This document shows positions 833 to 44,456 of a stretch of DNA of 64,000 nucleotides, in pieces. The stretch is from Macrostomum lignano (taxonomy: Eukaryota), in contig NIVC01001111.1 of assembly GCA_002269645.1 (NCBI GenBank), positions 248,001 through 312,000 on the forward strand, in the 5' to 3' direction. The translations under genes and the position numbers were made by a program. Within the stretch, counting starts at the first letter, position 1. The number at the start of each line of letters is the position of its first letter. The notes under the pieces were generated by a model. That model was given only the letters and a program-made list of their open reading frames with translations. It did not search any database and was not told the DNA's origin.

Positions 833-876
833 TGTCAGAAATTTAATCAAGGTCTGCACCACTGACGCGAGGTGCA

Positions 877-1793: not shown

Positions 1794-1838
<45 letters not shown>

Positions 1839-1902: not shown

Positions 1903-1951
1903 GGTGACTTCGGGGATGCCGTCGGCTACAGAATCGGGCAGGCTGGATGAG

Positions 1952-1959
1952 TTTTTATA
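1952..1959 (-). promoter_or_regulatory. Candidate TATA box (TATAAAAA) for the orphan gene
   Basis: Minus-strand TATAAAAA ~50 bp upstream of ATG 1902; positional inference only. Confidence 0.35.
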
Positions 1960-3155: not shown

Positions 3156-3475
3156 AATATATTTCAATTAAGAAAACCTCATTAACGATAGTTTAATAAA
3201 ATATTAACTTTTCTTATTGTTACTGTTGTTATTAAAGGAAAAAGAAACCTCTACCTTTTAAAGTCTCTTCGAAAATCTGCAGACTGCCTGTCAATTATTA
3301 TATTTTTCCAAGAGCAGTCGCATTGGGCGTCTCGGGCAAGCAAACAGATAGAGATCCGAGTCTTTAATGGTAGCCTCCCCACACGATCATTTGGCCTCCT
3401 GCATGAGCCAATCAGGGGCTAAGAAGTATTCGAGCATTTGCATAGATTCCCACGATTTTTAATTTCGAGACTCTA

Positions 3476-16583: not shown

Positions 16584-16673
16584 GTTAGTTGAAGCAGACT
16601 CGGCATTAATTGGCTGCGAATAATACAGAATGCGCTGCTCCCGTGCCCGCACCTGGGCTCCCTGGGCACGGAA

Positions 16674-19851: not shown

Positions 19852-21644
19852 CCGCCAGGCGTCAGTCGCCGATGCCGCCACCCCGCAGCGGCATGATGCT
19901 GTTCTGCGAGTGCAGCTCCATCCGCGGCATGCCCAAAATTGCGCGCTCCTCGTCGAACTTCCTGCGCAAAATGTGGCTGGCCTTCGTCGTGATCATGACA
20001 CTGGTGCTCATCATCTCCTCTTCTCTGTCCGTTCGCTCCTACCTTCAATACGATGTCATCGTTCACACATCTGACATCCCCAATTTTGCTTCACCTTTCC
20101 CTGCCATCACCGTTTGTCTTCACCAGCCTTTCTCGTCGAGGGCCTTCAAGCTGTGGAGCAACAGGTCCGTGATGTCGCCGCGCGAGTACAATGCTCTGCT
20201 GCGTCGCTGGGCCCTGGAGGCCATCAACAAGACTAGCGACTTCTTTCGGATCCAGAAAAAAGACGCCGATCCCATATCCTACTCCCTCTACTACGACATG
20301 CTGGAGGTGTACTACCAAAACATCCCGCTGCGTGACATTACTGTACTAAGCCACGATCCCAGCGTCATACGAAAGTGCATCGTAAAAACTGACGGCGTCA
20401 GCCACTTCAAGGACCCGTGCAACCTGACGGAGCACGGCTTCAGCATAAAGCTTTTCTCGCATCAGAAGCACCTGAATTGCTACACGGTGGAGCCGAATAC
20501 TCCAGCGGCCTCTTTCGACACTCAGTTCCTCGGCCTCGCAGTGGACCTCGGCCCCCCGCCTGACTATGCCAATTTCCAGCAGGGCTTTCTCAACGACGTC
20601 TTCGACCAGGCCACGGGCCTGCGGGTAGTCATCCACGAACCCAACCGCTACCCGAACGTGGAGCACTTTGGCAAAAACATCGAGGCTGGCAAGATGACTG
20701 AGCTGGCCTACACTCCCACGCTGTGGAATCGCAGCAACACCCCTGTGAATCCGTGCATCACCAGCGGCGAGTCATACATGGATCTTGGGCGCAGGTTCGA
20801 TTACACTCAGCGAGAGTGCGCCAACAAGCACCTGCAGGAGTTGGCGATTCGCCGCTGCAACTGCATCGTCTGTTTGCCCGGGGTTCCTCGCACCCAGCCT
20901 CCGAGCAAGGAGCTGCCCTATTGCGCCTCTTTTACAAGCGAGTACAACAGTACTTTCGAGGACTTTGTCCGCCAGCTGCAGTGCTACGTTGAAATAACGC
21001 GGGACCTGCCGCAGTGGCCCTGCCTGCCACGTTGCCTCCTGACGGAGTACGAGACAAAATTGTCGGTGACCTACTGGGGCGCGACCGACTGGCAAGTTTA
21101 CTGGTCAGGAAAGTTCGTCAATGACATTGAGGAGCTCGGCGACCTCATTAAAGAGCGCGAGGGCGGGACGGGCCACGGCGAGGCTGCTCTGCGACCGCGC
21201 TTCGAGGCGCTGAAGGAGCGGCTCCTGCGATACCTGACCAAAGCCAACCTGACTGCGATCGCCAATGGCCAGGGGCCGGACGACATGGTCGAGTCCAAGA
21301 ATTTTGCCTACGTTGTGCTGAAGCGCAAAAGCGAAAACCTCATTCTCAAAGAGGAGAAACAAGTGCTGACGCTAAACGCGCTCATGTCGCAGATCGGTGG
21401 CCTCTGCTCTCTCACCATCGGGCTCACCTGTGCCTGCGCCGTCGAGGTCATCGAATTTTTCTACATCTACCTGACTGGCAAAGGCGGCGGAGCGGGGAAT
21501 GCCGCTGCCCCCGCCATCCGACAGGAGAAGTCAGTTCCGCTCCGGTCGTCTCGGACGGAAGACGAAGACGCTTCTCCAGCAATTACGCATCCAGGGCAGT
21601 CTCTGAATTCGCAACACCACACTGCGAAACCGTCTGAACTGTAG
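19852..21644 (+). CDS. DEG/ENaC (ASIC/FaNaC-like) amiloride-sensitive channel subunit, main exon
   Basis: TM1 (MWLAFVVIMTLVLIISS), FPAITVC, NCYT, GLRVVIHEP, Cys-rich thumb (C..RRCNC, CLPRC..TEY), pre-TM2 and TM2 LNALMSQIGGLCSLTIGLT. ORF-track ATG at 19872; frame is open to the acceptor at 19851. Confidence 0.93.
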
Positions 21645-27790: not shown

Positions 27791-29182
27791 ATGAACGACA
27801 GTTGCGCTGGCATTCTGAGCCGGCACAGCAGCAGTCTCAGCCTCAGCCTGGCATTCGTGCCCTATAGTGTGCACCTCGCCCGCACTCTGCTGCCGCTTTG
27901 GCTGGTGCTTGGCGTTCCAGGCAGCCTCCTCAGCCTGGCCGTCTGGAGCAGTCGCCAGATGCGCAGCAGCTCCAGCATCTACCTGTGCGCCTTGGCTGTA
28001 CTGGATGCGGCATTCCTGCTGATGCAGCAGCTGCCCTGGCATCTGCGAGAGTACTATGACGTTAGAGTGCTCGACAACCGGCCCGTCTGCTGGGCCTTCC
28101 CTGTCTACAGCATCTGGATGCAGTACCTGTCCCCGGCTCTGATTCTCGGCTTCACTGTTGAGCGCTACATCGGCATCTGCCATCCGTTCAGCAGCCACCG
28201 GCTCTGCACCGTCCGCCGGGCTCTGGCGGCCACCGCCTGCCTGTCTGTCGGCTGCCTTCTGGTGGCGCTGATGCAGCTCCGCTTCTATCACTACGACGCT
28301 AGCGTTCAGATCTGCACAGAGGACAAACGGATTCTGGAGGCTGGCACGATGCAGCACAGGTTCTACAACGTTTGGACGAAGATCACGGAAGTGCTGTTCT
28401 TCGCCGCAGCACCGCTGACTATTTTGGCCTTCAACCTGCTGGTGCTGGTGCAGGTGAGGCGGTCAGCGGCTAGCGGAGCGGTGGCCACCGTGTCCGAGCT
28501 GTCTGCGCCCATGCCAACGTCGGCGCAGCGGCGACAACCGACGGCAGCCACGGTGACGCTGCTGAGTGTCTCCTTCTACCAGATCGGCGCCATGCTGCCG
28601 GTCACCGCCCTGCTGTTTGCCAGCATCAGCCTGGTCAGCACCGACTTGGAGGGCCTCACCTGCAACCTCACCGACGCCCAGGTGCGCCAGCAAATCGATG
28701 ACGGCCAGCTGCCCCAGCTGCGCACCTATTTCACTCACCTGGCCGCTAGTCACATAGTTAACAGCCTGGCCGTCAGTCACAATGCGCTGAAATTCTTTGT
28801 CTACCTGGCCACCGGCGCCCTGTTTCGCAGGGAGCTGGCCAGGCTGCTGTGCACCCGGCGACTCGGGGTCGCCGCGGCTGCCAGCGTCGGCGGCGGTCAA
28901 GACCGAGCCGGCAGAGACGACGCCTTCATCGCCTCGGTGCAGCTGCCGTCCCGACGCACGTCGGAGCAGCGTCGACGCCTGCGTCGGTCGGTGCGCGGCT
29001 TTTCATCTGCAGCGCCGGCCGAAGCCGAGGCCGGCGACGACGCGGTCGATGCTGAGAAGAACGGAGCATCGGTGCTGTCGAAATCCGAGGAGAAGCCGCC
29101 GCTGCTTCTGCAGCCGCCACCGCATCCGACGCAGACTTCAATCGAGTTGGAGGGCGAGCAACTGCAGCTGTCCTGGGTCTAG
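27791..29182 (+). CDS. Rhodopsin-family neuropeptide GPCR, FMRFamide/myosuppressin-receptor-like, single coding exon
   Basis: Seven hydrophobic segments; SSSIYLCALAVLD (TM2), FTVERYIGICHPF (ERY), TM7 HNALKFFVYLATGALFRREL with helix 8. Confidence 0.92.
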   Translation: MNDSCAGILSRHSSSLSLSLAFVPYSVHLARTLLPLWLVLGVPGSLLSLAVWSSRQMRSSSSIYLCALAVLDAAFLLMQQLPWHLREYYDVRVLDNRPVCWAFPVYSIWMQYLSPALILGFTVERYIGICHPFSSHRLCTVRRALAATACLSVGCLLVALMQLRFYHYDASVQICTEDKRILEAGTMQHRFYNVWTKITEVLFFAAAPLTILAFNLLVLVQVRRSAASGAVATVSELSAPMPTSAQRRQPTAATVTLLSVSFYQIGAMLPVTALLFASISLVSTDLEGLTCNLTDAQVRQQIDDGQLPQLRTYFTHLAASHIVNSLAVSHNALKFFVYLATGALFRRELARLLCTRRLGVAAAASVGGGQDRAGRDDAFIASVQLPSRRTSEQRRRLRRSVRGFSSAAPAEAEAGDDAVDAEKNGASVLSKSEEKPPLLLQPPPHPTQTSIELEGEQLQLSWV

Positions 29183-29736
29183 AGGAGTCTTATCTCGGGG
29201 CCCAGCCGCAGATTCTTGACCCATTCCGCCGCCTCTTTAGGCGGCCTGCCTGTTCACATAGACGAGGTCACTCCGGCCAGTTTATCTGCATAACACAGTT
29301 TGCCAGACAAGATTATCCTAGTCAACTGTACTATAATTTCCATGTCTATAGCTTGAGGAAAATCTACCAAAGCTGTTTATAAACCATTAATTGTTTAACT
29401 GATCTAACACTAAAAATATCATGCAAGATTTCGTTGGTGTAAGCCTTATTTATTGCTTATAATTTGCACTTTTGATATGAGTGAATCAAAACGTTGGCAG
29501 CTACTACCGTCAGCACTCAGCTGCTTTGGCAGAAAAACTTCAAGTTAGGCCAAAAAAGAGATTTTTAGTATTTAGCAGCTCTCGTCTTCTGTCAGAGATA
29601 ATCTCAGAGATTTTGCTTTCCAAACTTAATCCAGACTAAGAAAATGCTATGGTGTTAACTTTTCTCTCAATTTCCTGTCTAGGCTGATTCAACTTCTACA
29701 AGCTAATTTTTTATATATTTCTATCCGCCTTGGCAA

Positions 29737-30435
29737 CTGTCCCTTCCTGTCTTAGTGTCTGTCCCTTCCTGTCTTAGTGTCTGTCCCTTCCTGTCTTAGT
29801 GTCTGTCCCTTCCTGTCTTAGTGTCTGTCCCTTCCTGTCTTAGTGTCTGTCCCTTCCTGTCTTAGTGTCTGTCCCTTCCTGTCTTAGTGTCTGTCCCTTC
29901 CTGTCTTAGTGTCTGTCCCTTCCTGTCTTAGTGTCTGTCCCTTCCTGTCTTAGTGTCTGTCCCTTCCCGTCTTAGTGTCTGTCCCTTCCTGTCTTAGTGT
30001 CTGTCCCTTCCTGTCTTAGTGTTTGTTCCTTCCTGTCTTAGTGTCTGTCCCTTCCTGTCTTAGTGTCTGTCCCTTCCTGTCTTAGTGTCTGTCCCTTCCT
30101 GTCTTAGTGTCTGTCCCTTCCTGTCTTAGTGTCTGTCCCTTCCTGTCTTAGTGTCTGTCCCTTCCTGTCTTAGTGTTTGTTCCTTCCTGTCTTAGTGTCT
30201 GTCCCTTCCTGTCTTAGTGTCTGTCCCTTCCTGTCTTAGTGTTTGTTCCTTCCTGTCTTAGTGTCTGTCCCTTCCTGTCTTAGTGTCTGTCCCTTCCTGT
30301 CTTAGTGTCTGTCCCTTCCTGTCTTAGTGTCTATCCCTTCCTTTCTTAGTGTCTGTCCCTTCCTGTCTTAGTGTCTGTCCCTTATTGTCTTAGTGTCTGT
30401 CCCTTCCTGTCTTAGTGTCTGTCCCTTCCTGTCTT
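29737..30435. repeat. 22-bp minisatellite (CTGTCCCTTCCTGTCTTAGTGT), ~31 copies
   Basis: Direct reading. Confidence 0.97.
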
Positions 30436-32606
30436 GCGCCAAAATCCAACAGCTACCCATGACAGCCCATGAGAGTCCGGGCCTCCCCAGCCCCAATCCA
30501 ATCTAATCCTGTCGGTAAAATTGAAAAGCCCCTAACCTTCCGCCTCTAAAATAATCTTCCATCTGACTCGAAGCCGGCGCTGACGCATCAGAAGCCACCT
30601 GACAGGCCAGTGACGGACGGCCGCCCGCTGCCAGGGCGGACAGCTAACACGCCGCACAGAATAGGGGAAGGCTAATCAGTCATTCGCTGACAGCGGGGAA
30701 TCTGTTGCCAGCTCATCTCTCTCGCTCTGTTTCTTTCTTTTCCCATCTTGACTTCAGAGGCCACTTCGCGTAGCGGCAAAAGGCCCGGCCAGCAGCAAGT
30801 CAGGCACCAGAAAGTACTTTCTATATAGGTTCAGTATAGGCCGGGGGTCAGCCAGCCGTGACCACCAATAACTCACGGAGCCCCCCCCCCTGCCTACTGG
30901 CGCATTCGAATGGCGAATGGCGTACGCACGTATGCTGGCGCATTATGGCAAGCAACTGCATATGCCAACTGAGCCGCTAGCCGGCTTCCCTTGAGCCTTG
31001 GGGATCGACTTTGCTTGATTGATTTTCATTTTCTTCTTCTCTTTCTCTAGTTGTAATTAACTAATAATAATATTATTATTACTAATATCATTATTAAGTT
31101 TGAAAACAGCGTGATTCACACCCATCATAGGCTAGGCTGGCCATGTAAAAATTAATCCAGGCAGGCTAAGCATTACTACGAGCGTATGTGGCCTTTCATA
31201 AATAAACATTAGCAAATGTCTGTCAGTACGGTTGCTTATTTACGAAGCCTTTAGCGGTTAAGCGGTTTAGTGGTCAGTCGTGTGGAAAAATGCCTAGCAT
31301 TATAATGTATACTTCAGCCTGCGGGCAGAAACTGCATGCATGCCAAACTGGTTGGGGAAATTGTTCTGCTAATTGGAGAATTCGATGAATTTTGGCAATG
31401 AAATCAAGTTCTGATTTAAAATAAAATGAGCATATAAGGTAAAGTAAAGTACATATTCGTCTGCGCAGAGATAAGTTGAGCTAAAGTAATAAAGGGAAAA
31501 TGTAATTTTCACATTCATTTAGATTATTTACCAGTAAAAGTTAAAAATAATTATAAGGTTTGTTTTAATCTTCATAAATTATTTTCCAGGAAACAAAATA
31601 CCCGTCCATCTACTTTCCTCAGGGGTCCCTGCCGGGCTTACTGTTATGAAAGCAGTTTGAAGTATAGCTCGTAAAAATCAATAATGTAAAAGACTTCCGC
31701 ATTTCAAACAACCCTTATAATATTTTAATGTTCAAAAGCTCATGGTTTCTTTAAGCTAAGTATGCAAAGCATTGCATTTCAAAACAACTGTTTAAAGCTT
31801 TGGTTTAGAATTGATCAGATCATTTCTAAGACAGTCGAGTGTAGCGGTCCTCTACTGCGGTTGTCCATGTGTATTCCCGTCCAGCTTCCAGGTGGTCCTT
31901 GAATCGACTACTATGAGTAGCTAACTATCAAGATAGCTATTGCTCAATTGATAACGCAGGTAAAGTCAATCATCTTCTTATCTCAGCAGTCTTTATCCAT
32001 AAATTTCTCTCTTTCCAAGCAAATCGTTTCTTAGAAATCTCCGTCTCTCTTTGACTTGCAGAAGCCGCAGAATTTATCGCACAAAGAAGCCCTAGAAATC
32101 CCGCCCATCAGATGATGACCAGTGACAACGAAAATGGCCCACTATGGATTAGTCAGTAATAAAAGATTAACCAGTTGCACAGAATGCCAGAAAGAAAATG
32201 AACCAGTATCTAGTCAATAATTCATGATAGAGATAAAGAGTTAATTGGAAAATGCTATAGCAAAAGAGAAAGTGCTGCGCAAGCCTCCTCAGGTCTCCTT
32301 TACGCAAGCAATTGCTCATTCTTGCCTTATCCTGCCTGTGTATGCCAGTGAGCTGCAGGAAATTTATTTGCTCTGTCCCTGTCTTGGCGTTGGACGGCTG
32401 CGCTGGGCGGGAATATTTATTAGCAGCAATACAGGCCTCAACAATGGCCTAGCAGATGCCAAAGCTAGTGAGCTGGCTTGATTTATTACGCAAAGAAAAT
32501 AAGAGTACTATGCATGCTATCTAGCATTGCCAAGCTCTCGTTTCCTGATGCAATGACTGTTGCGACTGTTAGAAGAGTTCGGTTGTGCTCTGCTTGCTGA
32601 GATTGA

Positions 32607-32985
32607 GGGGTAGCGGAGGGTAGCTATCTGAAGGACACTGCGGGTAGCGGAGGGTAGCTATCCGAAGGACACTGGGTAGCGGAGGGTAGCTATCCGAAGG
32701 ACACTGGGTAGCGGAGGGTAGCTATCCGAAGGACACTGGGTAGCGGAGGGTAGCTATCTGAAGGACACTGCGGGTAGCGGAGGGTAGCTATCCGAAGGAC
32801 ACTGCGGGTAGCGGAGGGTAGCTATCCGAAGGACACTGGGTAGCGGAGGGTAGCTATCTGAAGGACATTGGGTAGCGGAGGGTAGCTATCCGAAGGACAC
32901 TGGGTAGCGGAGTAGCTATCCGAAGGACACTGGGTAGCGGAGGGTAGCTATCCGAAGGACATTGGGTAGCGGAGGGTAGCGGAGA
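32607..32985. repeat. 32/34-bp minisatellite (GGGTAGCGGAGGGTAGCTATC[CT]GAAGGACACT[GC])
   Basis: Direct reading, ~11 copies. Confidence 0.95.
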
Positions 32986-33737
32986 GTCACTGAAGGACTT
33001 TGGGCAGTGGAGTGTCACTGATTTTCACGATCAAATTAAAGTTGAGAGCCATATCGGACACTTCATCCTAAGCAAGCAGGCATGTATTGCAGGCAGAAAT
33101 TTAAACAAATTGTACTTGTGACTGAGTCTTCTGATTGTGTCCTATCAATGCATCCAGCACTCCTCCTGTAATGTCACGATGTCACGGTCGCCTAGTTTTG
33201 CGACAAACATGTCATGTCTCTATGACTTCGTGTCTCCTGTCAGAGTGTAGAGTGAAGTTACCGCCAGACACCCAACGGTAGCCACCTGCTAGCCGCTGTA
33301 GTTTTCGTGTCAGATTTTATCGAGTCCAATCTTACACAGAGCCCTATAGACGCTACTGCCAGGCCAGTAAAAGCTAATGAATATTAATGGATAGGAGAGA
33401 CGCGAGCTCCAAGCTGCTTTCGGTTGGCACGCGAGCGAGCGTTTCTTGAAATTGCTTGTGCAAGAAGAAAGATAAGAAATAGGGAAATTCGAATAGAATG
33501 AACCAGAGGGATGGGGAGAGTGAATGGACTGCGAGAGGATGATCGGAAATGTCCGCTCGAAGCATGGAGAGAACGGAGGCCACTGCGTATTTGATTTTAT
33601 CTAGAAGAACTCTGATATTTAATATTTACATGCTATTGAACACCAAGTGCGCTGATCCAAAAGTTCATAAAATCTATTTTAAGCAGAGTCGATATCCTTT
33701 CAAAGGTGATAATTAATGCTCTCATTGCTAATGTGTA

Positions 33738-34376
<639 letters not shown>

Positions 34377-34627
34377 TTGTTCGGGCATAAATATTGTCAC
34401 TATTTTTTTCATTATCTATAAGAACCAATCAATACTGCTGTGAAACGCAGTCTTCATTAAGTACGCTCGTATTTAGTTACTTTAGAAAATTATTCAACCA
34501 TGATTAGCCAATGCAGCAACTCCTTTCTTCATTTACTTTTCAAGCCGCAAACAGGTCAAACGATTCGGAAGCTCGAATGTAAGCTTCAGCGCACAGTGAG
34601 TGCCGCTCCTGTTCTGACAGAGCAGCT

Positions 34628-36312
34628 TTGGCAATCTGCAATTCAAATTCTGCTGACCAGACTGCGTGCAACACTCGACTATATGAGGCCAGCGAGCCCC
34701 AGGCAAGCCGGCTGACAGCCATGCACAGCCCGGACAGCACGGAGGAGATCGGCCTCAGCCCCGTTGGCGAGGCTTCCAACCAGCGCCCCGGGCGTCATCG
34801 GCCAGGTCGACAGCAAAGTCGCGCACTGCGACGCGTGCACGACGGCCCGAGGCTGACGCCGCTGCCGGCGCTGCTGGCTGGCCCGGCTGGCGGCCTGGCC
34901 GGCCTCCTGCTGGGCGTCAGCCTGCGGATTCTCTGCGCAGACGTCGCCGCTGGCGGCCTGCTGGCCTGGGCGCTCGGCTGGCCCGGCCGGGCCTGGGCGG
35001 ACCTCCTCCGCTGCGCTGTGCTGCCGCAGGCCACGGTTGCCGCTGCCGCTGCGCTGCTCGAATTAAGTCTTGGCAGCGTCGCGGCGCTGGTCTTAGTAAC
35101 GGTTGCTATGCAGATGGCAGCCTGGATTCTGGCCACCGGGGCATTATGTCGCTGATGCTGTGGCTTCGGCCTGGACAGCTGAGAGTCGAGGACAGCAGCG
35201 GCGGAGGCGGCGGCGAGTTCACCTCAGGTGACACCCTGGCCGCCGCGGCCGCTATTCTGGACGTCCTGGGCGGTCTGCTGTTCCCCGACAGCTTGGCTGC
35301 GGCTGCCATGAGCAAGCGGCCCCTGAGGCTGCACGCTTGGCAGCTCCGCTGGGCCAATGCCAGCAATGCAACCAGCAGCGCCGATCCGGCTGACTTTGCC
35401 GTGTTCGCCCCGCCCGGTCCGAACTTGCTGGGCCTGCTGGCCGTCACAGGGACAGCCGTAGCCCTGCTGAAGCATCGCGACGTCCACGGCGACCTATTCG
35501 AAACGGTAAGAGCTCTGCGGAGTGCCGTCGCGCGCGCCCACCACTGCCTGCGCCACCTGGCGCCGTTTGGCTTTGCCAGCCTGGCCGCCCAGGCCGCGCT
35601 GGAGGCGCCGCCGCCGCCGCCGCTGGCCGACGTTGGAGCCAGCGTGCCCGGCCTGGCGCTGTGCCTCGGCCTGCTGGCGGCCTGGCTGCTGCTGCTGGGA
35701 CTCGCACTGCCTCTGCCGCCGCTGCTTGCCGCTTCCGGCGGGCGGCCCAGCCCCGTCCGCTGCCTGGCCGAGGCGCTGCCCGCTGCCGGAGTCGCCTTCG
35801 CCACGGGGTCCGGCGCTGCAGCGATCGGCGCCAGTCGGCGCTGTTGTCGCGCCCTCGGCGCCTCGTCAGCCATCGGCGGCGCGGATTTTCTGCTGCCGTT
35901 GGCCGCTTCGCTGAGCGCCGGCGCCGGCGCCTCCAGGCTGGCCGGCTGCGCCATCTTCCTGGGCCAGCGCAGCCTGGCGGCCAAGCTCGGCGCTGACGTG
36001 CACCGGCTCCTGGCGATCGCTGCAGTGGCCACGGCCTGCGCACTGGTCTCGGCCGGCTCTTCGTCTCCTGCGCCGGCCGGCCTGGCCGACCTTCGTCTCG
36101 TCCTGCTGGCCGGGGCAATTCGAGCCGACGAGCTGCACCTGCTGGCGCCGACCGAGAGGTTCGCGGCCCGGTGCTCGGCGGCGGTCGGCGCCCTGATCGA
36201 CATCGCCTGCTGCTGCGTTTCCGACCGGCTGCACAGGCGGTGGTCGAAGGCGGCTGACGGCGATATAGGAGAGGCAGAGGCGGAAGCCGACGTAGCAGAG
36301 GCTGAAGCTTAA
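34628..36312 (+). CDS. Highly divergent SLC1/EAAT (dicarboxylate/amino-acid:cation symporter) homologue, 1-bp frameshift at ~35138
   Basis: ORFs 34628..35155 and 35146..36312 join if one G is added to ACCGGGGCATT. By-eye alignment to EAATs: LGWPG..LLRCAVLP (FPG..MLKMLILP), WLRPG (IHPG), ILDVLGGLLFPDSL (LDLIRNLFPPNL), PNLLGL (NVLGL), LAPFGFASL (YAPIGIAFL), FLLPLAASL (VLPLGATI), AIFLGQ (AIFIAQ). Start could be 34628 or 34721. Confidence 0.75.
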
Positions 36313-37302
36313 AACTTTGACTGACTAACTCAGCGCCAAAGTCCAGGTTCATCGTGTATTAAATGGGCACGCAATCGGCATCAGAGGAAATAGCCAGCGA
36401 AACTTTGACAGCAGAAATGACTGAATTTGCTTATTGCAGCCTGCGGCTAGGTGCCCTTTGGCTAACAGCTGGCACTGCATTGCAAAGTGGCACAAATGTT
36501 TACATTGCGTTCTACTGACTAGAATCAGTCTTTGACTGCTGCTACAAACCTCTTGATTTGGCTTGGTAAAAGAAGCAATTTCGTGATCGCATCATTCATT
36601 GTGTGTAAAATAAAATTTTAGCTCAAGAATCTTGTTATTCAACTCCGAGCTCGTATAGATAATACAATTTTAATTTGCCTGTGGAATGATTAAAGAGAGC
36701 TCCTACTGACAAGTAGGCAGGAACGAATCATATTGGATAATGGGATGCGAATACTGTTGCACACTGACAGATCAATAGTAGTGCGAAACCACTCGGAGTG
36801 TGTATGGAAGAGCTGGGCACATGTTTAACCTCCATTATATTTATCGGACATTGGGTTATTGAATTTGAACAGCAAGCTCTTTAGGACTTGCTTACTGCAT
36901 CACCCAGGGACTCGGGACAGGAAACGGCCGAGTCATGCAAAAAAGTTTACGACTAAGCTCACCTGAAATGTAGTACACAGCGGCATTCTCATACTTTCTA
37001 AAAATAAATGTGCCAAAGTAAATGGTATATATTCCCCATTTATACCAGTGCTAAGGCAATATTTTTTGCCATAGACACTTGTATAAATGGGAAATATTTG
37101 ATGTATCCATCAGTTGCCATTTATTTGCGCTCAGTTCCATCACACACTGGAATGGTGCAATAGTGCATCACACACTGAAGCGACATAAACGGAAGCTTCC
37201 AAGCAAGCGAGTGGCTAAAAGAAAAGTCAGAAGTTCATGCATGCGATCTAAGAGCTACACTGAACACTGCATACCGGAGCCACGTAAACGGTTTTCTACT
37301 AA

Positions 37303-38482
37303 GTGGATTTCATCATTAAAATGCCTCGGTTGCTGATTGGATGCACTGCTCAGCGGATTTTAGGGTATTTCCTGTTAGCAGCGTTCAGTACAATAACTGC
37401 GAAGCTGTATTTTGATTACTTGAACGCACAGGTAAAGAAAAGTTTGCCATGGGAATCGGCTAGCGATAATAAACGTCCCATAACGCACCAAGGCTTCAGT
37501 GGGAAAAGCACGGAGAGCACCACTCAGCCCGCTGAGCTGCCCCAGCTGCCTTCCTCTGAGTTCTACATTCGAATGCTGAGCGCAAGGTCGCCGCCTCGAG
37601 GTGATCTGTTCGATCCGCAGATCAATGCGACTGAACTGCGAGCAACTGTCAAGCTGCTGTGGGCGTTTTTGGACCTGTGCAAACAGCACAACATCCAGGT
37701 GATGCTGTACGGAGGTACACTGTTAGGCTCGTACCGGCATCATGGCGTCATTCCATGGGATGACGATCTGGACATGCTGATGAGGGAGGCCGACAAGCGC
37801 AGACTTATTGAAGCTCTGAAGGGGTGAGTCTATCGACATTGCGTGCAACTATAGGCGTTCCTGTCATAGACGGTTGGTTAGTCAAGTCCTCGCACCCTTA
37901 GTAGACGTTCCTAAAAATGGTAGTCAAAAAAGACAAAACATCAACATCAACAGGCACCCGGACCTTCGCCTAAGGCAAGCTGGTCGGTGGAAAGTGTCCA
38001 GCAAGTCACATTGTCTTAACGTGGCCAGACACGGCTGCTGGCCCTTCATTGACCTGTCATTCCACGAGCTGGAGGGTGGCTGGGTTAATGACTTGCACGA
38101 CTCTTTTGGGAAGAAGTGCCGCTACCCAGAAAAGGTGACCTTCCCGCTGCATAAGAGGCCGTTCATGGGCCGCTGGGTCGACTCACCCAGAGATGCGCTC
38201 AACTTTCTATCCTACTCGTACGAGCCTTCAAACGCATGCATCAGCCTGCACTATTCCCACAAGTTTGAGCGCTATCCAAACGTTACATCGGTGTCAATCG
38301 ACTGCAAGGAACTCGCTCTGACCTACCCGTTTGTGTATCGCGTCCCGGACTCTGCTACCTCTCGTGGTGGCGTCTTGGAGACGCTGGTATTTTCTGACGG
38401 CGGACCGGTGTACACTGTGCCAGTTAATGAGCCAAACGGTGTGATCAACGCCATTTACAGCACTCTGTTGGTGAAGAATTGA
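37303..38482 (+). CDS. LicD/fukutin-related family phosphotransferase, type II membrane protein; exons 37303(or 37321)-37823 and 37870-38482
   Basis: N-terminal TM; [24 protein letters not shown] (LicD signature) and WPFIDLSF; 46-bp GTGAGT...CATAG intron (37824-37869) joins the two ORFs in frame. Confidence 0.9.
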
Positions 38483-39591
38483 GGCAAGAAGGCAGAGAGC
38501 GATACTACGAGTTACCGATTAAGTAGCTTTGGAATGAGCAAGGAAGATAAACTATAACAATAGGTCTGGGATAAAAACAATATGCTGAAGCTTAGCGATT
38601 CGTTTGCATTCATTGTATCATTTTGAGGGGCATTTTGGTTTTTAGATGTAAAGTAAATCCAATAGTTGCAAGCATATCCAATATCCTATCGTGCCGATGA
38701 CGAGGTCAATAAACGTGGCACGAAAGCATTTTTTGCTATAACACTTGCATAAAGGGGGAATACTTCTTTTTCCGTTCAATTTCAACAACCCTCGCATTCA
38801 GTTTCGGCAAGCTGACATTCAATTTTATCACTCTACGCTAGTATATTTAGCTACTTCAACCGTCATTCAATTTCGGCAAGTGGCATTCAATTTCGTCAAT
38901 TGGATATTCTATTTCATACCATAGTGAGGGCGTTACTTCTGTCTATGGACAAAGCTTGTTCCTGCATGCAGATTTCCCATTCAATTTCGGCATGCTGCAT
39001 TCAATTTCAGCACTACATTTTCGGCGCGCTTTTTTAGCGTACTGTATTAATCTTAAACAGCCCCCTCTTAAACTGACAACAAAAGCACTGCTCTCCAAAA
39101 TCGGAGTGGCCTGTACTAAATCTAAAACTAGCGTCCACGCAGCTGCATGGCCGCCTCTCTGTCGTAGTCATACTTTTCTCACCGATAGAGCCAATCATTG
39201 TAGACAGCGCGTGTGCGTGTTTTTTCGGATGTACTTTTCCACAGCGCTTGCCGAGTTGCCGATTTCCCGAGTTGACACTGAAGACCAACTCAGCTCGGTT
39301 GTCATGATGACTCTTAGATTTTTTGCCTATGTTAACAACCAAGGCAAAAGTGAATGACGACATTTAAAAAACGCACTGAAGAAACGGTCAAGCGTATGGA
39401 ATGCATGCAAGAAAAGCTGAACCATTTTTTCCATTTTTTTGCGTAAAAACCTTTACAAAAACGAGTACTTGCTACTGACAAGTAGTAGTCTAAAACTGGA
39501 CGGCCACTCTCCCCTTTACAAGTCACAGATTTTCTGCCTTGCGCTCCTGATCCGTAATGCAATTCGTTTGGCTAAAATCACGAGCTGCTTG

Positions 39592-41878
39592 CTAATGCGC
39601 TGCTGCTTTATCGCCGCTGATTGACAAAGGCGGTACTGAAGCGCCTGACGCCACGGGCCGGTCATCGGACAAGTCGAGCGGCTCCGGCAGCTCCCAGGCT
39701 AAGCCGAAGTCGTCATCGCTCTTTCGTTGGCCCTGCTCGCCCTCGCCGTCGCGGCAGGCAATGACGCCAAGCCGCGGCACGGGCACTGCGGCCGAGTGAA
39801 GCACGGCGAGGCAGCGCCCGCTGGCTGAATGGATTAGGCGGCGCTTCAGAGGCTCGTAGCACCAACTTTGCAGTCTCGCCAGACTACCCTCACCGTTGTC
39901 AGTGTCCTGACACGGCGCCAGCGACAGCTGTTGGTTGTTGTAGTGCAGACAACTACCATCGGATCGCGCCAGAACCAGCGGCCTGCCGCCTCTATCAGCG
40001 GAGGTGGCGGAGGCTGCTGCCGCTTCCGCGACCACCCACGTCTGGCCGCCGCCTTCGCTGTGGCATTCCCGAATCATAGGCGTCGCCGCCTTCTCTTCCG
40101 CGTCGAGGGTGGAGAACACGCCGTCGAGGCACCAGATGCGGCCCGAGAGTGTCGTAGCTACGCGCAGTGGCCCCATGCGAATGGCGGTGGCGTTGTCAGC
40201 CGCAAGGAGCCACCACCGCGGCGCCAGCTGCTCTGGGCAGACGGTGTCCAGGTACCAGCGGAACGAGCGGCAGCCAAGCCTTCGTCGGAGCTGCCGCCTC
40301 TGCGAGACGTCGCCGAAGTCACCCAGCCGATAGTTGAACTGGCGATACAGGATATGCTTGAAGCCGTCCAGCCACACTTCCGCCAGTCGGATGGCATTCC
40401 GCTTTAACACCTCGGCGGCGCCGCTTTTGCCCCAGGTGTAGGGGCTGACGGAGCGAAACAGGTGGCCGACGATCGAGCAGGGCACAATCTCGATTCGGCC
40501 TTGATCGCCGCACATCCACACGCGGAAGCTGAGCTCGAGATTCTCGCTGCCCCAAATCTCCATCCCTGGGTCATAGCCGCCGAGCTCAGCAAAGAAGGCC
40601 CGGTCTATGGTGAAGAGGCCGCCTGGCATAGTGGCGCTCGGCACTGGATCGGCGCGGCCTGTGAGGTTCCGCCGTACCCGGTCTGGCACCGGGCGCCAGG
40701 CGAACGCCAGACCCGGCCAGTCGAAACCGCCTACCGTCATTCGCTCCGGGGCCACGTGCAGGAAGGCCAGAGACTCGCTGCTGACCACGTCGATGTAGGG
40801 CACGGCCACCGTTCGTCGGCTGCGGGCCACTCGGTCCAGCAGGGGCTCCAGCCAGCCTTCGGCGCATTCGACGTGCGAGTCCAGGAAAGTGAGCGTCTGG
40901 CCAGTTGCGGCCGCGGCGCCAACCAAGCGGGACCTGAAAGATTCAGAGTTTGGGATTCCTATTGTGCGGTAGTTGAAATTGAAAATGCTCGTCATGACAA
41001 AGCGGTGTCAGATTGCTATCTAAGACCCAGAGTTGACCTTATAGTGCCTGCCTGTGTACTGGTAAATGAGAACCTGTACAGATTGTCACCTCTCACCTGA
41101 CCAGCCCTTCGCGGCGGGAATTCCGTATTAATCTGAGCCGAGCGCTCGTACCGGACCGGCCCAGCTCAGCCAGGTAATCCTCCAGAGGCCGGCCGAGCTG
41201 CGGTCGAGTTGACGCGTCGTCCACCAGGATGACCTCGTGCAGCAGGTTCCGGGGCGACCTGTCCAGCACGGAGTGCAGCGTCCTGAGCAGCGCCGACCAG
41301 GCCTCGTTGTGCGCGCAGACGATGACGCTGGTGTTGGGCAGGCCGGCCGCTGTCCAGTTATTCTTGCGGCAGGCCAGCGGCCGAAAGTCTTGCAGGCGAC
41401 GTCGCGGTCCAATTCGATCGCTGGCAAACTCGTTGAAGCCGCTGTCGCGCCAGCCAGCCTCGAATCGGTCGCGCTCGTCGGCGTTCAGCAGGCTCGGGTC
41501 GACCCACACCGGGGCGCCAAGGTCGCCGGGACCGCCGGCCGCTGATGTCGGCGCACCGGTTGATGGCGCCGTCAAGCTTGTCTTCATCGCGGACGTTGCC
41601 GTCGAGCTGGTCGCTTCTTCCATCATGAGGATGCTGCGCAGCCGGTCCTGACGCTCGCGCAGTCGCTGCAGCCGCTTCCCCCGGTCGCTGCGCCTAAACT
41701 CGGCGCTCAGGCGGGATTTCTCAGCCAGCACTCGGTCGCTGGAGTCGGTGTCATCGTTGAGGCCGTGATCCGCGTGGATACTGAGCAGCGCAGCTACCAG
41801 GGTCAGCCACAGAAGCGAGGTGAGCAGAATCAGAAGACGAAACAGCGGGTACCGCCGCCAGAACAGCCAAACTCGCAT
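39592..41878 (-). CDS. GALNT: Polypeptide N-acetylgalactosaminyltransferase; exons 41878-41097 and 40933-39592
   Basis: TSVIVCAHNEAWSALLRTLHSV, EVILVDDAS, spliced REGLVRSRLVGA, FLDSHVEC (DxH), YDPGMEIWGSENLELSFRVWMCG, C-terminal ricin-type CLD..C..Q-W; 163-bp GT-AG intron 41096-40934. Confidence 0.96.
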
Positions 41879-43371
41879 TATCAAACTTATTCTTGCTTTC
41901 TAATGCTGCTCTGGCGCAAGACTGGGGCTCAGTTCCACTCGCTAGCTCGTATAGTTGAAGAGGAAGCTCCAGTTATTAAAGGCTTCGAGTGGCCTATGCG
42001 CTAAGTTGGCTAATCCCCATCCGATTGGCCGAACAACCAAAATCACTTCTTCAACCGGCTTTCCTACGAGAGGTCGGAGAGCATTGGAAACGGATTGTGA
42101 GCCATTGGTTTTCTACTATTGCCTAGCCAAGGAGAAGAGAGCTCAGCAGCTAACTCTCTAAACCCTGTTGCTACCCCCCAGAGCGGCTGTCCAGCCGAAA
42201 AATTGAGCAGAAATCCGTTTCCTAGCTGCGCTGCGCAGACAGCCTGCTTCCTGCGGACTATTTGCTGATGTGCTGGGTGAGTGGTAGGCAGTTGGGGGGT
42301 GGGGCGTCCAGATCCAATCCCTACCTTTGCAGGTGCTGTATTTGTCTACTCCTAGCTGACAGTGCGAGGTCATTGGTGCCAGCAAACCCTCGATTTCTAT
42401 TTTAAAAATGCTTGCACCTCAGCTACTCACCCGAGAATGCATAGTTGGCAGCGGGTTGCTCAGAGCAGGGAAGGCAGTCAGCCGAAGCAAATTGGGATAT
42501 TCTTTTCGACCATTCCCGCGGGGGGGGGGATATCCTCCCCAATGCTGAGGCGCCTATGCGTGAGCACAGCTGAGCGATTCCGGACTAACTGCTTTCAAGC
42601 CGCCTGGCTCAACTGCGATCAAGAAATCAGCCCGAAGGCTCCTAATTAGAAATCAATCAAGTTTCTCGTCTACCCCGGTAGCGCACAAACTGCATGCCCC
42701 GCTGCCGCAGGGGACTCCCGATAGACTTAGCCGAATCGCTTTCAGTCCGAGGCTCTGAATAAAGCTTTGCCGCCTTTCCCCCTCGGGTCCGGATTCTGAT
42801 CCCTCTGGTGGATAAGCTCTTCTTCATCCTAAACTTGTGGGGGTTCTAAACTGGACTAGCTAGTGCTCAAGAATTCCCTTACAGCTTAGTAGGCTTGTAC
42901 ATCATTTTCTGTCCCATTGTACAGCAGCCGAATGGGTTTGAAGTAATGTACGCTCGTACTTGCATTTATTTAATACAAGCTGCTTATTGAGTGCCAACTT
43001 TATTGAAACACCTCATTTTTTATTGCTCCGTGGCGCAAACCCTGAATATTAACAAGAACCAAGACTGAGCACCCAAAAACCAAAGCTTGTTATTAATTCT
43101 ATTAGACTACTCTATGTCGTGTATCTAAGTATTTTTAAGCAAATAGGAAAAATAGGAAATTCTATAAAAAATATGGCTGACTCGCACTGCAAGGTGGCCA
43201 GATGTCCCGGCGCATCAGAGGACTCGGAGAGGAGCAGGCGTCCTTCAGTCTTGTGAAATTATTTACTTCGGTCCGATGAAGCGTACCGCTGTCGAGACTG
43301 TGGGGGAGGGGGCAAAGCTACCAGTATGGCGCAATAAAACTGCAATTGAACCTATGGCCGGGCCCTAATGG

Positions 43372-43718
43372 GGAATAAATAGGTTTCTGTAGTCTATGGC
43401 CGGACCCAAACATGGAATAAATAGGTTTCTGTAGTCTATAGCCGGACCCAAACATGGAATAAATAGGTTTCTGTAGTCTATGGCCGGACCCAAACATGGA
43501 ATAAATAGGTTTCTGTAGTCTATGGCCGGACCCAAGCATGGAATAAATAGGCTTCTGTAGTCTATGGCCGGACCCAAGCATGGAATAAATAGGTTTCTGT
43601 AGTCTATGGCCGGACCCAAGCATGGAATAAATAGGTTTCTGTAGTCTATGGCCCCTGGACCAAGTGGGGAATAAATAGGTTTCTGTAGTCTATGGTCCGG
43701 GCCAAGTGGGGAATAAAT
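43372..43718. repeat. 42-bp minisatellite (GGAATAAATAGGTTTCTGTAGTCTATGGCCGGACCCAA[AG]CAT), ~8 copies
   Basis: Direct reading. Confidence 0.95.
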
Positions 43719-44456
43719 ATCTTATATCTACTTGTCAATCAATCACTATAATGATAATACAAGACCTCTAAAATCAAGACATGCCATGTAACACTAATAA
43801 CAGATATTAAAGTAGTTTGTTATAAACTACTTTGACATCCACATTTCATGCACAAGAGTATAATTACGTGTATTAGATAGACATATACTATAGGCGTATT
43901 AATGACCCAAAAATCATTTGAAGTGAAAAGTTTACTTTATACCCGCAAGAAAAAAGCGCAGTATTCTACTAACTTGAAATTTGTTGGTTGATTTCTACTT
44001 TTGTGGAGAGATTTAGAAAAGCAATTTAGAGCTATTCGGCAAGTATTGCAGCAGGTGCGGGGACAATTGCTACCAATTCTATCATTCCCCTGCACTGGCG
44101 GTCTAGCAACTACTTTAGTCCCAATGAACTATTGAGCTGAAAATCCTGTCTGTCAGCTACCGGGCCAGATCTCAAGCAGCCGGTAGTCTTCCTTCACCCC
44201 CTTACCCTCCAGATCGCTGATCGCCTTGGGGGGAAATCGATAATATATCGATCAGCGCCAACTGCTCGCTCGCATGGGGAATGGGGATTGGGGCGTTTCT
44301 CTGTCCCTCTCTCTCCTCTCGCTCCCGCCCGCTCCCCGCCGCAAATGCTTAGAAAACTACAATAGGGGAGGGAGAGATCATGAAAAAATTAGGCAGAGTC
44401 GACAACAGAATTGAAAGCCAATTTTGAAGCCAGCAGGACCTGAGCAAGCAGAGACG

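What the first reader, a model, noticed from the sequence alone, without database searches (positions are those of the whole stretch)
34628..36312. SLC1/EAAT-fold protein with nearly all transport-site residues replaced: candidate pseudo-transporter
The two ORFs together follow an EAAT scaffold from TM1 to TM8, but my by-eye alignment maps TM7 NMDG to SAGA, the HP1 serine motif (TSSS) to TGSG, and the GltPh TM8 residues D394, R397, T398 and N401 to A, S, A and G. Only the D390-equivalent (as E) and the D405-equivalent remain acidic. In known SLC1 proteins these residues bind the amino acid and Na+, so coupled glutamate/aspartate uptake is unlikely. About 1.7 kb of frame with no premature stop other than the one frameshift suggests retained function, for example an uncoupled anion channel (SLC1s carry a chloride conductance), a regulatory trimer subunit, or a new substrate. 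The gene appears intronless.
Basis: partly seen in the sequence, partly recalled or inferred. Interest (0 to 1): 0.8.

Follow-up and report, generated by a model that had tools for sequence, protein, structure and literature searches.

The report
Flatworm glutamate-transporter relative without binding sites
A Macrostomum lignano gene keeps the full architecture of a glutamate/neutral-amino-acid transporter but has replaced every residue that normally binds sodium and the amino acid. An intact copy exists elsewhere in the same genome, so it is either a rare "dead-site" transporter-fold protein or a paralogue just starting to decay.

Summary
Window 34721-36312 (+) encodes a full-length, intronless SLC1/EAAT-type protein of 530 codons. 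It matches Pfam SDF at 63.6 bits (E=2e-17) over the whole profile, and the AlphaFold model matches ASCT2/EAAT1/EAAT3 with TM-score 0.75-0.84.

Formal alignments confirm the replacements: NMDG to SAGA, TSSS to TGSG, and TM8 D394/R397/T398/N401 to A/S/A/G. The TM3 Na3 threonines and the TM7b Tyr-Glu pair are also lost. All 58 nearest relatives keep these motifs.

The single frameshift is a GGGG run at 35138-35141. A 99%-identical copy on another M. lignano scaffold has GGGGG and an intact 530-codon ORF. The same assembly also carries 1-nt homopolymer deletions in a conserved neighbouring gene.

Long-term evolution was not neutral:
- There are no stops.
- Charges are almost absent from membrane-core positions.
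- V→A is common while L→P is avoided.
- Codon usage matches the host genes.

Recent evolution looks relaxed:
- The copies differ by 4 nonsynonymous and 0 synonymous changes.
- One of these changes a conserved Gly to Arg in TM4c.
- The gene is missing from the older paralogous regions.
- No orthologue, annotation or expression evidence was found.

Verdict: this is a real SLC1 paralogue without ligand sites and cannot be a Na+-coupled carrier. Whether it still functions is unresolved, at roughly even odds.

The parts
34721..35141 (+). CDS part 1, codons 1-140 plus one base: cytosolic N-terminus, TM1 (34853-34933), TM2 with the kept 'LP' (34994-35065), and most of TM3. The TM3 Na3-site region VAMQMAAWILA lies at 35102-35134.
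   Evidence: Best coding frame by host codon-usage likelihood up to about 35140. Adds 12 bits to the SDF match and extends it to profile position 11. Aligns with EAAT1 TM1-TM3 without gaps.
35138..35141 (+). GGGG homopolymer, the site of the single frameshift in this copy.
   Evidence: Scaffold NIVC01003800.1 (L003) has GGGGG here and an uninterrupted 530-codon ORF. L004 and L005 share GGGG. Short-intron alternatives would delete TM3.
35142..36312 (+). CDS part 2 (codons 142-530 plus stop): end of TM3 with 'PG', TM4a-c, TM5, TM6, HP1, TM7, HP2, TM8 and an acidic C-terminal tail.
   Evidence: Pfam SDF 51.6 bits on its own. No stop in this frame. Synonymous codon usage (RSCU) correlates with host genes at r=0.91 in frame, against 0.61-0.80 in the other frames.
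35356..35373 (+). NASNAT: two N-glycosylation sequons (N213, N216) in the long TM4b-c extracellular loop.
   Evidence: Only 4 Asn remain in 530 residues, and two sit in sequons in this loop. Metazoan EAAT/ASCT proteins are glycosylated in this loop (established knowledge). The roughly 43-residue loop itself is the eukaryotic type.
35416..35469 (+). TM4c GPNLLGLLAVTGTAVALL, with the conserved G-x-N-x-LG kept. G244 is Arg in the intact sister copy.
35803..35829 (+). HP1 tip TGSGAAAIG, in place of T-S-S-S-x-A-T-L-P.
35887..35967 (+). TM7 FLLPLAASLSAGAGASRLAGCAIFLGQ. SAGA (35914-35925) replaces NMDG and R-L replaces Y-E. The flanking F-x-L-P, I-F and Q are kept.
   Evidence: Roles of N, M and D in Na1/Na2/Na3 are from PMC11297037.
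36046..36087 (+). HP2 tip VSAGSSSPAPAGLA: a 3-residue insertion, with the conserved 'IP' proline shifted or lost.
36154..36201 (+). TM8 ERFAARCSAAVGALID, in place of D-x3-D-x2-R-T-x2-N-x3-D. Only the first position (as Glu) and the last Asp stay acidic.
34700..36310 (.). GC-rich island (65-79% GC) whose limits coincide with the CDS, within DNA of about 37-47% GC.
   Evidence: GC1/GC2/GC3 are 0.76-0.79/0.59-0.60/0.77-0.81, against neighbour genes at 0.53-0.65/0.41-0.53/0.60-0.80.

Best explanation
This is a genuine Macrostomum lignano paralogue of the SLC1 (EAAT/ASCT) family. It is intronless, 530 codons long, and present in three about 99%-identical copies in the Mlig_3_7 assembly, one of which is fully intact.

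Shown:
- It keeps the 8-TM plus 2-hairpin architecture and the glycosylated TM4b-c loop.
- It has replaced every side chain that SLC1 proteins use to bind the amino acid, the three Na+ ions, and the H+/K+ site (the TM7b Glu, by my recollection). Most replacements are to Ala, Gly or Ser.

Inferred:
- These losses accumulated while selection still kept the reading frame open and kept membrane-core positions free of charge and proline. This happened under strong GC pressure that drove I->L, K->R, V->A and T/S->A replacements.
- So for a long period the lineage encoded a translated SLC1-fold membrane protein without ligand sites, not a concentrative carrier.
- Without the Na1-Na3 sites and the Asp/Arg/Thr/Asn substrate clamp, HP2 gate closure can no longer be coupled to Na+ or amino-acid binding. 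Any remaining activity must be uncoupled (a leak or channel-like pathway, or facilitated passage of something else) or purely structural/regulatory.
- The gene now evolves under weak constraint and may be sliding towards a pseudogene.
- The frameshift in the window copy is either an assembly-type homopolymer error or a copy-specific lesion. It is not a property of the gene.
For: Family and fold:
- Pfam SDF at 63.6 bits for the repaired window copy and 62.6 bits for the natural intact copy.
- Full-length alignment to EAAT1.
- AF2 model with pLDDT 77.6 and pTM 0.79. Foldseek top hits are ASCT2/EAAT1/EAAT3 at E about 1e-11 and target-normalised TM-score 0.75-0.84.

Site loss:
-.
- It is unique among the 58 nearest relatives.
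- D and R are not depleted in the protein overall (4.2% and 6.8%), yet the binding-site D, D and R are gone.

Intact copy:
- L003 7232-8824 has GGGGG and no stop.
- 1-nt homopolymer deletions also occur in the conserved GalNAc-T exon of L004, so such errors exist in this assembly.

Evidence against long neutral decay:
- 0 stops against 4.1-8.2 expected.
- A simulated GC-biased neutral decay to the observed loss of invariant residues needs about 400 substitutions and gives 2.5-4.5 stops, with P(0)=0.005-0.065.
- No frame-breaking indel other than the homopolymer ones, whereas the copies differ by many indels in non-coding DNA.
- In 175 charge-free hydrophobic columns the protein has 2 charged residues (1.1%), against 19.9% elsewhere. 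Among substituted columns the figures are 1.7% and 20.2%, p=4e-7.
- For the same T->C change at codon position 2, V->A occurs 8/31 times but L->P 2/65, I->T 1/47 and F->S 1/18 (p=0.0016).
- Third-position composition and synonymous codon usage match host genes (r=0.91).
- The two N-glycosylation sequons are kept.
- The older paralogous regions, which lack the gene, show no GC island there.
Against: - Between the intact copy and the window copy, all 4 substitutions are nonsynonymous (Q21R, P55T, V126A, G244R) and none is synonymous. G244 is a conserved TM4c glycine. The ratio differs from the neighbours' 35N:59S (p=0.023) and fits neutrality.
- Two of three copies carry the GGGG frameshift, and one has a second 1-nt deletion. 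These may be real.
- The gene is absent from three older paralogous loci that keep LicD and GalNAc-T.
- No protein closer than 25-34% identity exists in 1.84 billion representatives, and none was found by word search. So there is no orthologue and no gene model.
- It is not among the called genes of Mlig_3_7. GalNAc-T and the GPCR are not called there either, so this point is weak.
- There is no expression data.
- The charge and proline tests rest on an alignment that itself favours like-with-like pairing.
- The AF2 fold is driven by an alignment of true SLC1 proteins.
Confidence: 0.5

Rival explanations
1. It is a plain duplicate pseudogene. One of several SLC1 paralogues in a polyploid, repeat-rich genome lost its function and is drifting. 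The open frame and helix-like composition would then be by-products of strong GC-biased substitution, which rarely creates AT-rich stop codons and turns I/M/F into L/V through the structure of the genetic code. No copy makes a useful protein today.
For: - Every functional residue is lost.
- 4N:0S between copies, including Gly->Arg in a TM helix.
- Frameshifts in 2 of 3 copies.
- The gene was lost from the older paralogous regions.
- No annotation and no orthologue.
- P(0 stops) under strongly GC-biased neutral decay is as high as 0.065.
- Degradation is even across the scaffold and transport domains, at 0.58 and 0.52 of normal conservation.
Against: - About 400 neutral substitutions would be needed to lose 18 of 39 invariant residues, yet the intact copy has no frame-breaking indel.
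- L->P, I->T and F->S are avoided while V->A is frequent, and charges are kept out of membrane-core columns even at substituted positions.
- GC3 and codon usage are still those of live host genes, and the GC island stops exactly at the CDS ends.
- Start codon, stop position and glycosylation sequons are kept.
- Both indels are 1-nt deletions in G/C runs, of the kind also seen in a conserved neighbouring gene in the same assembly.
Confidence: 0.35
2. It is still a working carrier with a new substrate and/or a different coupling mode. The pocket, relined with Ala, Gly and Ser, together with the longer HP2 tip, would accommodate a different and probably larger or uncharged solute. That solute would move by uncoupled or differently coupled elevator transport.
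For: - The elevator architecture, both hairpins, TM7 F-x-L-P, HP2 'AGL' and the D405-equivalent Asp are kept.
- Position 397 varies naturally with substrate in the family (Arg in EAATs, Thr/Cys in ASCTs: established knowledge).
- The HP2 tip has a 3-residue insertion.
Against: - No polar or charged ligand is left in the pocket to hold any substrate.
- Every known family member among the 58 nearest relatives, whatever its substrate, keeps N-x-(D/N)-G and the TM8 R/T/N set.
- Recent variation looks unconstrained.
Confidence: 0.1
3. It is not a host gene: a chance ORF in GC-rich DNA, bacterial contamination, or a recent horizontal transfer from a GC-rich bacterium.
For: 72% GC and Ala/Leu/Gly/Arg/Pro-rich composition resemble high-GC bacteria. 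GC-rich DNA gives long ORFs in all frames.
Against: - The SDF match is far above threshold and only in this frame.
- The best structural and sequence matches are metazoan EAAT/ASCT proteins, with the long glycosylated TM4b-c loop.
- Codon usage equals that of host genes.
- The locus sits in three syntenic M. lignano scaffolds between host genes.
Confidence: 0.01

Closest known systems
Human EAAT1/SLC1A3, EAAT3/SLC1A1 and ASCT2/SLC1A5 (PDB 5llu, 8cui, 8qrs)
   Same: - Same family by Pfam.
- Same 8-TM plus HP1/HP2 elevator fold (TM-score 0.75-0.84).
- Same long TM4b-c loop with N-glycosylation sequons.
- Conserved structural Gly/Pro and the TM2 'LP', TM3 'PG', TM4 'FP' and 'G-N-LG', TM5 'AP-G' and TM7 'F-LP' motifs.
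   Different: - All ligand side chains for Na1, Na2 and Na3 are replaced except the D405-equivalent (site residues as listed for ASCT2 in PMC11297037).
- The HP1 serines, the TM7b Tyr-Glu pair, and the TM8 Asp/Arg/Thr/Asn substrate clamp are also replaced.
- Only 63 bits on the SDF profile, and 17-26% identity to family members.
GltPh / GltTk (archaeal aspartate transporters)
   Same: Same fold.
   Different: Five of those six positions are changed. The window protein has the eukaryote-type TM4b-c insertion.
Plakobranchus ocellatus 'amino acid transporter' GFO22672.1 (P0001), the nearest sequence in 1.84 billion representatives
   Same: A divergent invertebrate SLC1 with a degenerate TM7 motif (NMDG -> LHGD) and an altered HP1 (TTLTS).
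   Different: Only 25% identical. It keeps the TM8 D-R-x-R-T-x-x-N set, so it is not an orthologue and has not lost all sites.
EAAT4/EAAT5, low-capacity SLC1 members that act mainly as glutamate-gated anion channels (established knowledge)
   Same: They show that the fold can be used for a role other than bulk uptake.
   Different: They keep all Na+ and glutamate ligands, and their channel is gated by them. Here the ligands are gone and the conserved TM2 Ser is Ala.
Transporter-derived sensors and 'dead' transporters in other families, such as yeast Ssy1 and Snf3/Rgt2 (established knowledge)
   Same: The concept is the same: the fold is retained after transport is lost.
   Different: Those belong to other folds (APC, MFS). 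They still bind their ligand and have proven signalling roles. Two keyword searches of the held literature did not turn up an SLC1 example.
GC-rich, fast-evolving genes shaped by GC-biased substitution, such as the 'hidden' GC-rich genes of birds (my recollection, not checked here)
   Same: Elevated GC at all three codon positions. The composition is rich in Gly, Ala, Arg and Pro and poor in Phe, Tyr, Met, Ile, Asn and Lys (Ala 22%, Tyr 0%). High protein divergence, and poor representation in annotations.
   Different: The process at work in Macrostomum is not established. Neighbouring genes share the high GC3 but not the high GC1/GC2.

Membership tests
SLC1 / SDF (Pfam PF00375) | Sequence match to the family profile above the curated threshold over most of its length | tested here: met
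   63.6 bits (repaired window copy) and 62.6 bits (natural intact copy L003), against a cut-off of 27.9, over profile positions 10/11-386 of 387.
SLC1 / SDF (Pfam PF00375) | 8 TM helices plus two re-entrant hairpins (scaffold and transport domains) | tested here: met
   AF2 pLDDT 77.6, pTM 0.79. Foldseek hits to ASCT2/EAAT1/EAAT3/GltPh with probability 1.00 and target-normalised TM-score up to 0.84. Caveat: the model was built from an alignment of true SLC1 proteins.
SLC1 / SDF (Pfam PF00375) | TM7 N-M-D-G motif (Na1/Na2/Na3 ligands) | tested here: not met
   SAGA at residues 399-402. All but a few of the 58 nearest relatives have N-(M/L/T)-(D/N)-G, and those few have H-M-D/N-G, S-M-D/N-G or L-H-G-D.
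SLC1 / SDF (Pfam PF00375) | HP1 serine-rich tip (S-S-S-x-A-T-L-P) | tested here: not met
   TGSGAAAIG. One Ser (S364) is kept, and S365 and P370 are replaced.
SLC1 / SDF (Pfam PF00375) | TM8 D-x3-D-x2-R-T-x2-N-x3-D (substrate clamp and Na1 Asp) | tested here: not met
   E-x3-A-x2-S-A-x2-G-x3-D. Only the last Asp and a conservative D->E remain.
SLC1 / SDF (Pfam PF00375) | TM3 Thr/Ser ligands of Na3 | tested here: not met
   The consensus Y-x-x-T-T aligns with M-A-A-W-I, and column 134 is T->A. Ligand roles are from PMC11297037.
Metazoan EAAT/ASCT branch of SLC1 | Long extracellular TM4b-c insertion carrying N-glycosylation sequons | tested here: met
   About 43 residues lie between 'FP-x-x-L' and 'G-x-N-x-LG', with NAS and NAT at N213 and N216. 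Actual glycosylation was not tested.
Metazoan EAAT/ASCT branch of SLC1 | Na+-dependent amino-acid transport and homotrimer formation | not testable with these tools
   Needs expression and uptake, current and cross-linking assays.
Processed or unitary pseudogene | Disabling lesions fixed in all copies, dN/dS about 1, no transcription | tested here: inconclusive
   One of three copies is intact, and two share a homopolymer frameshift that may be an assembly error. 4N:0S fits neutrality, but n=4. No poly(A) tail follows the stop codon. Transcription was not testable.

The most novel reading that the evidence does not exclude
This would be a naturally occurring SLC1-fold protein kept by selection after losing every Na+, H+/K+ and substrate ligand: the first 'pseudo-transporter' of the glutamate-transporter elevator family. 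It would work as an uncoupled channel or leak, or as a non-transporting partner or regulator. It appears restricted to the Macrostomum lineage and invisible to current annotations because of its extreme GC and Ala/Leu/Gly composition.
Probability: 0.4. Interest if true: 0.7.

Novelty: new variant of a known kind. Interest (0 to 1): 0.45.

Why it matters
SLC1 transporters are the textbook elevator carriers, and the coupling of HP2 gating to Na+ and substrate binding is central to how they work.

If this protein is functional, it would be a natural member with the whole coupling machinery removed but the fold kept. That would be a ready-made test of what the bare elevator scaffold can do: an anion or leak pathway, domain movement without a ligand, or hetero-trimerisation. 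It would also add the SLC1 family to the list of transporter folds recycled for non-transport roles.

If it is only a decaying paralogue, it still has value. It shows how strong GC-biased substitution can reshape a membrane protein while preserving helix chemistry. It also shows how homopolymer errors in long-read assemblies can mimic pseudogenes.

Tried and rejected
- **Word-indexed homologue search.** The search with the 530-aa protein returned nothing, probably because low-complexity words crowded out true relatives. The exhaustive phmmer search replaced it.
- **Exact-protein look-ups.** Look-ups of ORF2, the ASC ORF, the GalNAc-T ORF and P0060 found no record.
- **Second SLC1 copy in the window.** None found.
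- **Short-intron explanation of the frame change.** GT..AG candidates exist, for example 35067-35113 (47 nt), but each would remove TM3 or the 'PG' motif, which align gap-free with EAAT1. Rejected, and then settled by the GGGGG copy.
- **Single-ORF reading without a frameshift.** The ORF2 frame is open from 34687. It has no ATG before 35146, and its upstream translation is Arg/Pro/Gly-rich with poor codon-usage likelihood. Rejected.
- **Bacterial origin or contamination.** Rejected on codon usage, the metazoan loop and synteny.
- **Processed pseudogene.** No poly(A) tract follows the stop. Intronless ORFs are also seen for the neighbouring ASC and GPCR genes, so lack of introns is not diagnostic.
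- **Paralogous GalNAc-T locus L002.** No SLC1-like sequence.
- **Decayed copy in the older paralogous loci L006-L008.** Searched by tblastn, blastn and a family HMM on six-frame translations. Only an isolated exact 22-mer was found.
- **Scaffold domain better preserved than the transport domain?** No: 0.58 against 0.52.
- **'CDS less diverged than its flanks' as evidence of selection.** Found (4/1592 against 11/609, p=3e-4) but set aside. Divergence between copies is mosaic: the GPCR differs by 0%, LicD by 0.4% and GalNAc-T by 1.2%.
- **Literature.** No report of an SLC1 member lacking the sites, and nothing on this gene.
Full report
**What is at the coordinates**

The + strand carries two overlapping ORFs, 34628-35155 and 35146-36312, in adjacent frames. 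They lie in a 1.6-kb island of 65-79% GC whose borders coincide with the coding region. The surrounding DNA is about 37-47% GC.

- ORF2 alone matches Pfam PF00375 (sodium:dicarboxylate symporter, the SLC1 family) at E=9.9e-14, 51.6 bits. ORF1 and the long antisense ORFs match nothing.
- Adding one G to the GGGG run at 35138-35141 joins the frames into a 530-residue protein starting at ATG 34721.
- That protein matches the SDF profile from position 11 to 386 of 387 (E=2.3e-17, 63.6 bits).
- It also aligns end to end with crystallised EAAT1 (E=3e-10).
- A host-codon-usage likelihood shows a sharp switch of the coding frame near 35140.
- GT..AG pairs that could act as a short intron would each delete TM3 or the conserved 'PG' motif.

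**The substitutions are real**

HMMER alignments to EAAT1, a 41-sequence alignment and a 59-sequence alignment agree.

- HP1: TSSSSATLP becomes TGSGAAAIG.
- TM7: NMDG becomes SAGA, and the following Tyr-Glu becomes Arg-Leu.
- HP2: the tip has a 3-residue insertion and loses the conserved Pro.
- TM8: D-x3-D-x2-R-T-x2-N-x3-D becomes E-x3-A-x2-S-A-x2-G-x3-D.
- TM3: the Thr/Ser ligands of Na3 are Ala/Trp.
- TM2: the conserved Ser is Ala.

The ASCT2 structure paper (PMC11297037) assigns Na1 to the TM8 Asp plus carbonyls of the NMDG region. It assigns Na2 to HP2 carbonyls plus the NMDG Met, and Na3 to the NMDG Asn and Asp plus two TM3 threonines. Of these side chains only the TM8 Asp survives here.

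All 58 nearest relatives found in 1.84 billion representative proteins keep the TM8 set, and nearly all keep N-x-(D/N)-G. Asp and Arg are not depleted in this protein overall, so losing the binding-site Asp, Asp and Arg is not a simple effect of composition. Na+-coupled amino-acid transport by any known SLC1 mechanism is therefore excluded. That step is an inference from established structure-function knowledge.

**Fold**

AlphaFold2, run with the 41-sequence alignment, gives pLDDT 77.6 and pTM 0.79. Foldseek against the PDB returns ASCT2, EAAT1, EAAT3 and GltPh with probability 1.00 and target-normalised TM-scores of 0.75-0.84. The model leans on true SLC1 sequences, so it confirms compatibility with the fold rather than giving independent proof.

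The protein has the long eukaryote-type TM4b-c loop. Two of its only four asparagines sit there in NAS and NAT sequons.

**Whose gene it is**

Neighbouring ORFs are animal genes: a DEG/ENaC channel, a rhodopsin-type GPCR, LicD, a polypeptide GalNAc-transferase and a Ty3/gypsy element.

- The GalNAc-transferase is 98% identical to a UniRef Macrostomum lignano protein.
- The LicD protein is 97% identical to M. lignano BOX15_Mlig027643g3.
- Scaffold NIVC01001111.1 of assembly GCA_002269645.1 is 100% identical to the window across the locus.
- Third-position composition and synonymous codon usage match the neighbouring genes (r=0.91 in frame, against 0.61-0.80 in other frames).

So this is a native gene. 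What is unusual is the raised GC at codon positions 1 and 2 (0.76-0.79 and 0.59-0.60, against 0.53-0.65 and 0.41-0.53 in neighbours). This gives 22% Ala, 17% Leu, 10% Gly, 0.8% Asn, 0.8% Lys and no Tyr.

**Sister copies**

I used the LicD neighbour as a handle to fetch six M. lignano loci. Three carry the SLC1-like gene at more than 99% identity.

- In L003 (NIVC01003800.1) the G run is GGGGG, and the ORF is intact for 530 codons. It scores 62.6 bits on SDF.
- L004 (NIVC01000177.1) and L005 (identical to the window) have GGGG.
- L004 also lacks one C of a CCCC run at 34786-34789.

Both lesions are 1-nt deletions in G/C homopolymers. L004 shows two more deletions of the same kind inside the clearly conserved GalNAc-transferase exon. 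So assembly-type errors are present in this assembly, and the frameshifts may not be biological.

Three older paralogous loci (L006-L008) keep LicD and GalNAc-transferase at 81-89% nucleotide identity. They have no SLC1-like sequence and no GC island. Only an isolated exact 22-mer from the CDS and an 85-nt element downstream of it remain.

**Was the divergence neutral?**

At the 39 family columns that are at least 90% conserved, the protein keeps 21. Several results argue against reaching that loss by neutral drift.

- A GC-biased neutral simulation needs about 400 substitutions (0.26 per site) to reach it. It yields 2.5-4.5 stops, with P(0)=0.005-0.065.
- Composition-preserving shuffles give 4.1-8.2 stops, with P(0) between 0/5000 and 0.012. 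The observed number is zero.
- The intact copy has no frame-breaking indel, although the copies differ by many indels in non-coding DNA (9 gaps in 3.2 kb and 45 in 6.7 kb).
- In 175 alignment columns that are hydrophobic and never charged in relatives, the protein has 2 charged residues (1.1%), against 19.9% elsewhere. Restricting to positions that differ from the consensus gives 1.7% against 20.2% (p=4e-7).
- The same mutation type, T->C at codon position 2, is accepted as V->A (8/31) but hardly ever as L->P (2/65), I->T (1/47) or F->S (1/18) (p=0.0016).
- The commonest replacements are I->L (19/47), K->R (5/12) and T->A (9/24).

That is the pattern of GC pressure filtered by selection for helix-compatible residues. 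The caveat is that alignment methods favour like-with-like pairing.

I conclude that most of the divergence, including the loss of the ligand residues, happened while the gene was maintained as a membrane-protein ORF.

**Is it constrained now?**

- The intact copy and the window copy differ by four substitutions, all nonsynonymous: Q21R, P55T, V126A and G244R. G244 is a conserved TM4c glycine.
- Neighbouring genes compared across the same scaffolds give 35 nonsynonymous: 59 synonymous. The difference is significant but rests on four events (p=0.023).
- The CDS is less diverged than its immediate flanks (p=3e-4). However, divergence between copies is mosaic along the region, so I do not read this as selection.
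- Conservation relative to normal family members is equally reduced in the scaffold (0.58) and transport (0.52) domains.
- No protein closer than 25-34% identity exists in the searched collections.
- The locus is not among the called genes on the M. lignano scaffolds. The GalNAc-transferase and GPCR are not called there either, so this says little about expression.

**Conclusion**

The locus is a real, full-length SLC1 paralogue that has lost its ligand sites and cannot be a Na+-coupled carrier. Its history shows selection for an open frame and membrane-helix chemistry, and an intact copy exists.

Recent variation, the loss from older paralogous regions, and the lack of any orthologue or expression evidence leave current function open.

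| Reading | Probability |
|---|---|
| Protein-coding gene with a non-canonical role, or one that was such until very recently | about 0.5 |
| Non-functional decaying paralogue | about 0.35 |
| Carrier with a new substrate | about 0.1 |

Nothing specifically supports the anion-channel or trimer-subunit ideas.

Noticed in passing
window 36125-36146 and 36371-36455; L006 8967-8988 and 9283-9371; L007/L008 8817-8838 and 9128-9216: An exact 22-mer from the SLC1-like CDS, and an 85-nt element (88% identity) 60-145 nt after its stop codon, are the only pieces conserved in the three older paralogous loci that lack the gene. The order is colinear and the spacing is similar (about 225 nt against about 290 nt between the two pieces). 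The sequence between and around them is no more alike than shuffled DNA, and there is no Rfam match. They could be a relic of a deleted copy or small cis-elements.
   Followed up: partly
L004 (NIVC01000177.1), equivalent to window 41678 and 41336; also 34786-34789: The conserved GalNAc-transferase exon of this scaffold has two 1-nt homopolymer deletions (GGGGG->GGGG, CCC->CC). This suggests residual long-read consensus errors in GC-rich coding DNA of the Mlig_3_7 assembly.
   Followed up: partly
window 33757-34376: A (GTCT)n microsatellite of about 155 units lies directly upstream of the gene. It creates spurious 220-260-aa ORFs in all frames.
   Followed up: yes
window 16673-18282: A 28-bp tandem repeat of 57 copies at 98% identity. 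It is 61% GC but has CpG observed/expected of 0.13 and no ORF of 90 aa or more. This is a GC-rich non-coding contrast to the gene, whose CpG observed/expected is 0.97.
   Followed up: partly
window 3473-4131: An array of TAAACCC/CTAACC-like units (period 12/19, about 35-54 copies) that resembles degenerate telomeric repeats at an internal position.
   Followed up: no
window 52617-56606 (+): An intact 1329-aa Ty3/gypsy pol ORF (RT, RNase H, integrase zinc finger and core). This may be a recently active retrotransposon.
   Followed up: no
window 19872-21644 (+) and 27791-29182 (+): An intronless DEG/ENaC channel (590 aa, full ASC profile) and an intronless rhodopsin-type GPCR (463 aa). The GPCR and the GalNAc-transferase are not among the called genes of the matching NCBI scaffolds.
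   Followed up: partly
window 726-2022, both strands; 50196-51134 (-): GC-rich ORFs of 312-381 aa without any Pfam match. They could be further fast-evolving GC-rich genes or chance ORFs.
   Followed up: no
window 37027-37099: A palindromic hairpin scoring weakly on both strands against the mir-576/mir-548 models, far below their thresholds. It looks like a MITE-type inverted repeat.
   Followed up: no
window 27996-47183 vs L003/L004: Divergence between the three near-identical copies is mosaic: the GPCR differs by 0% from L003 but 2.5% from L004, and L004 shares upstream variants with L003 but has the window's CDS. This suggests recombination or gene conversion among copies of this polyploid genome.
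   Followed up: partly
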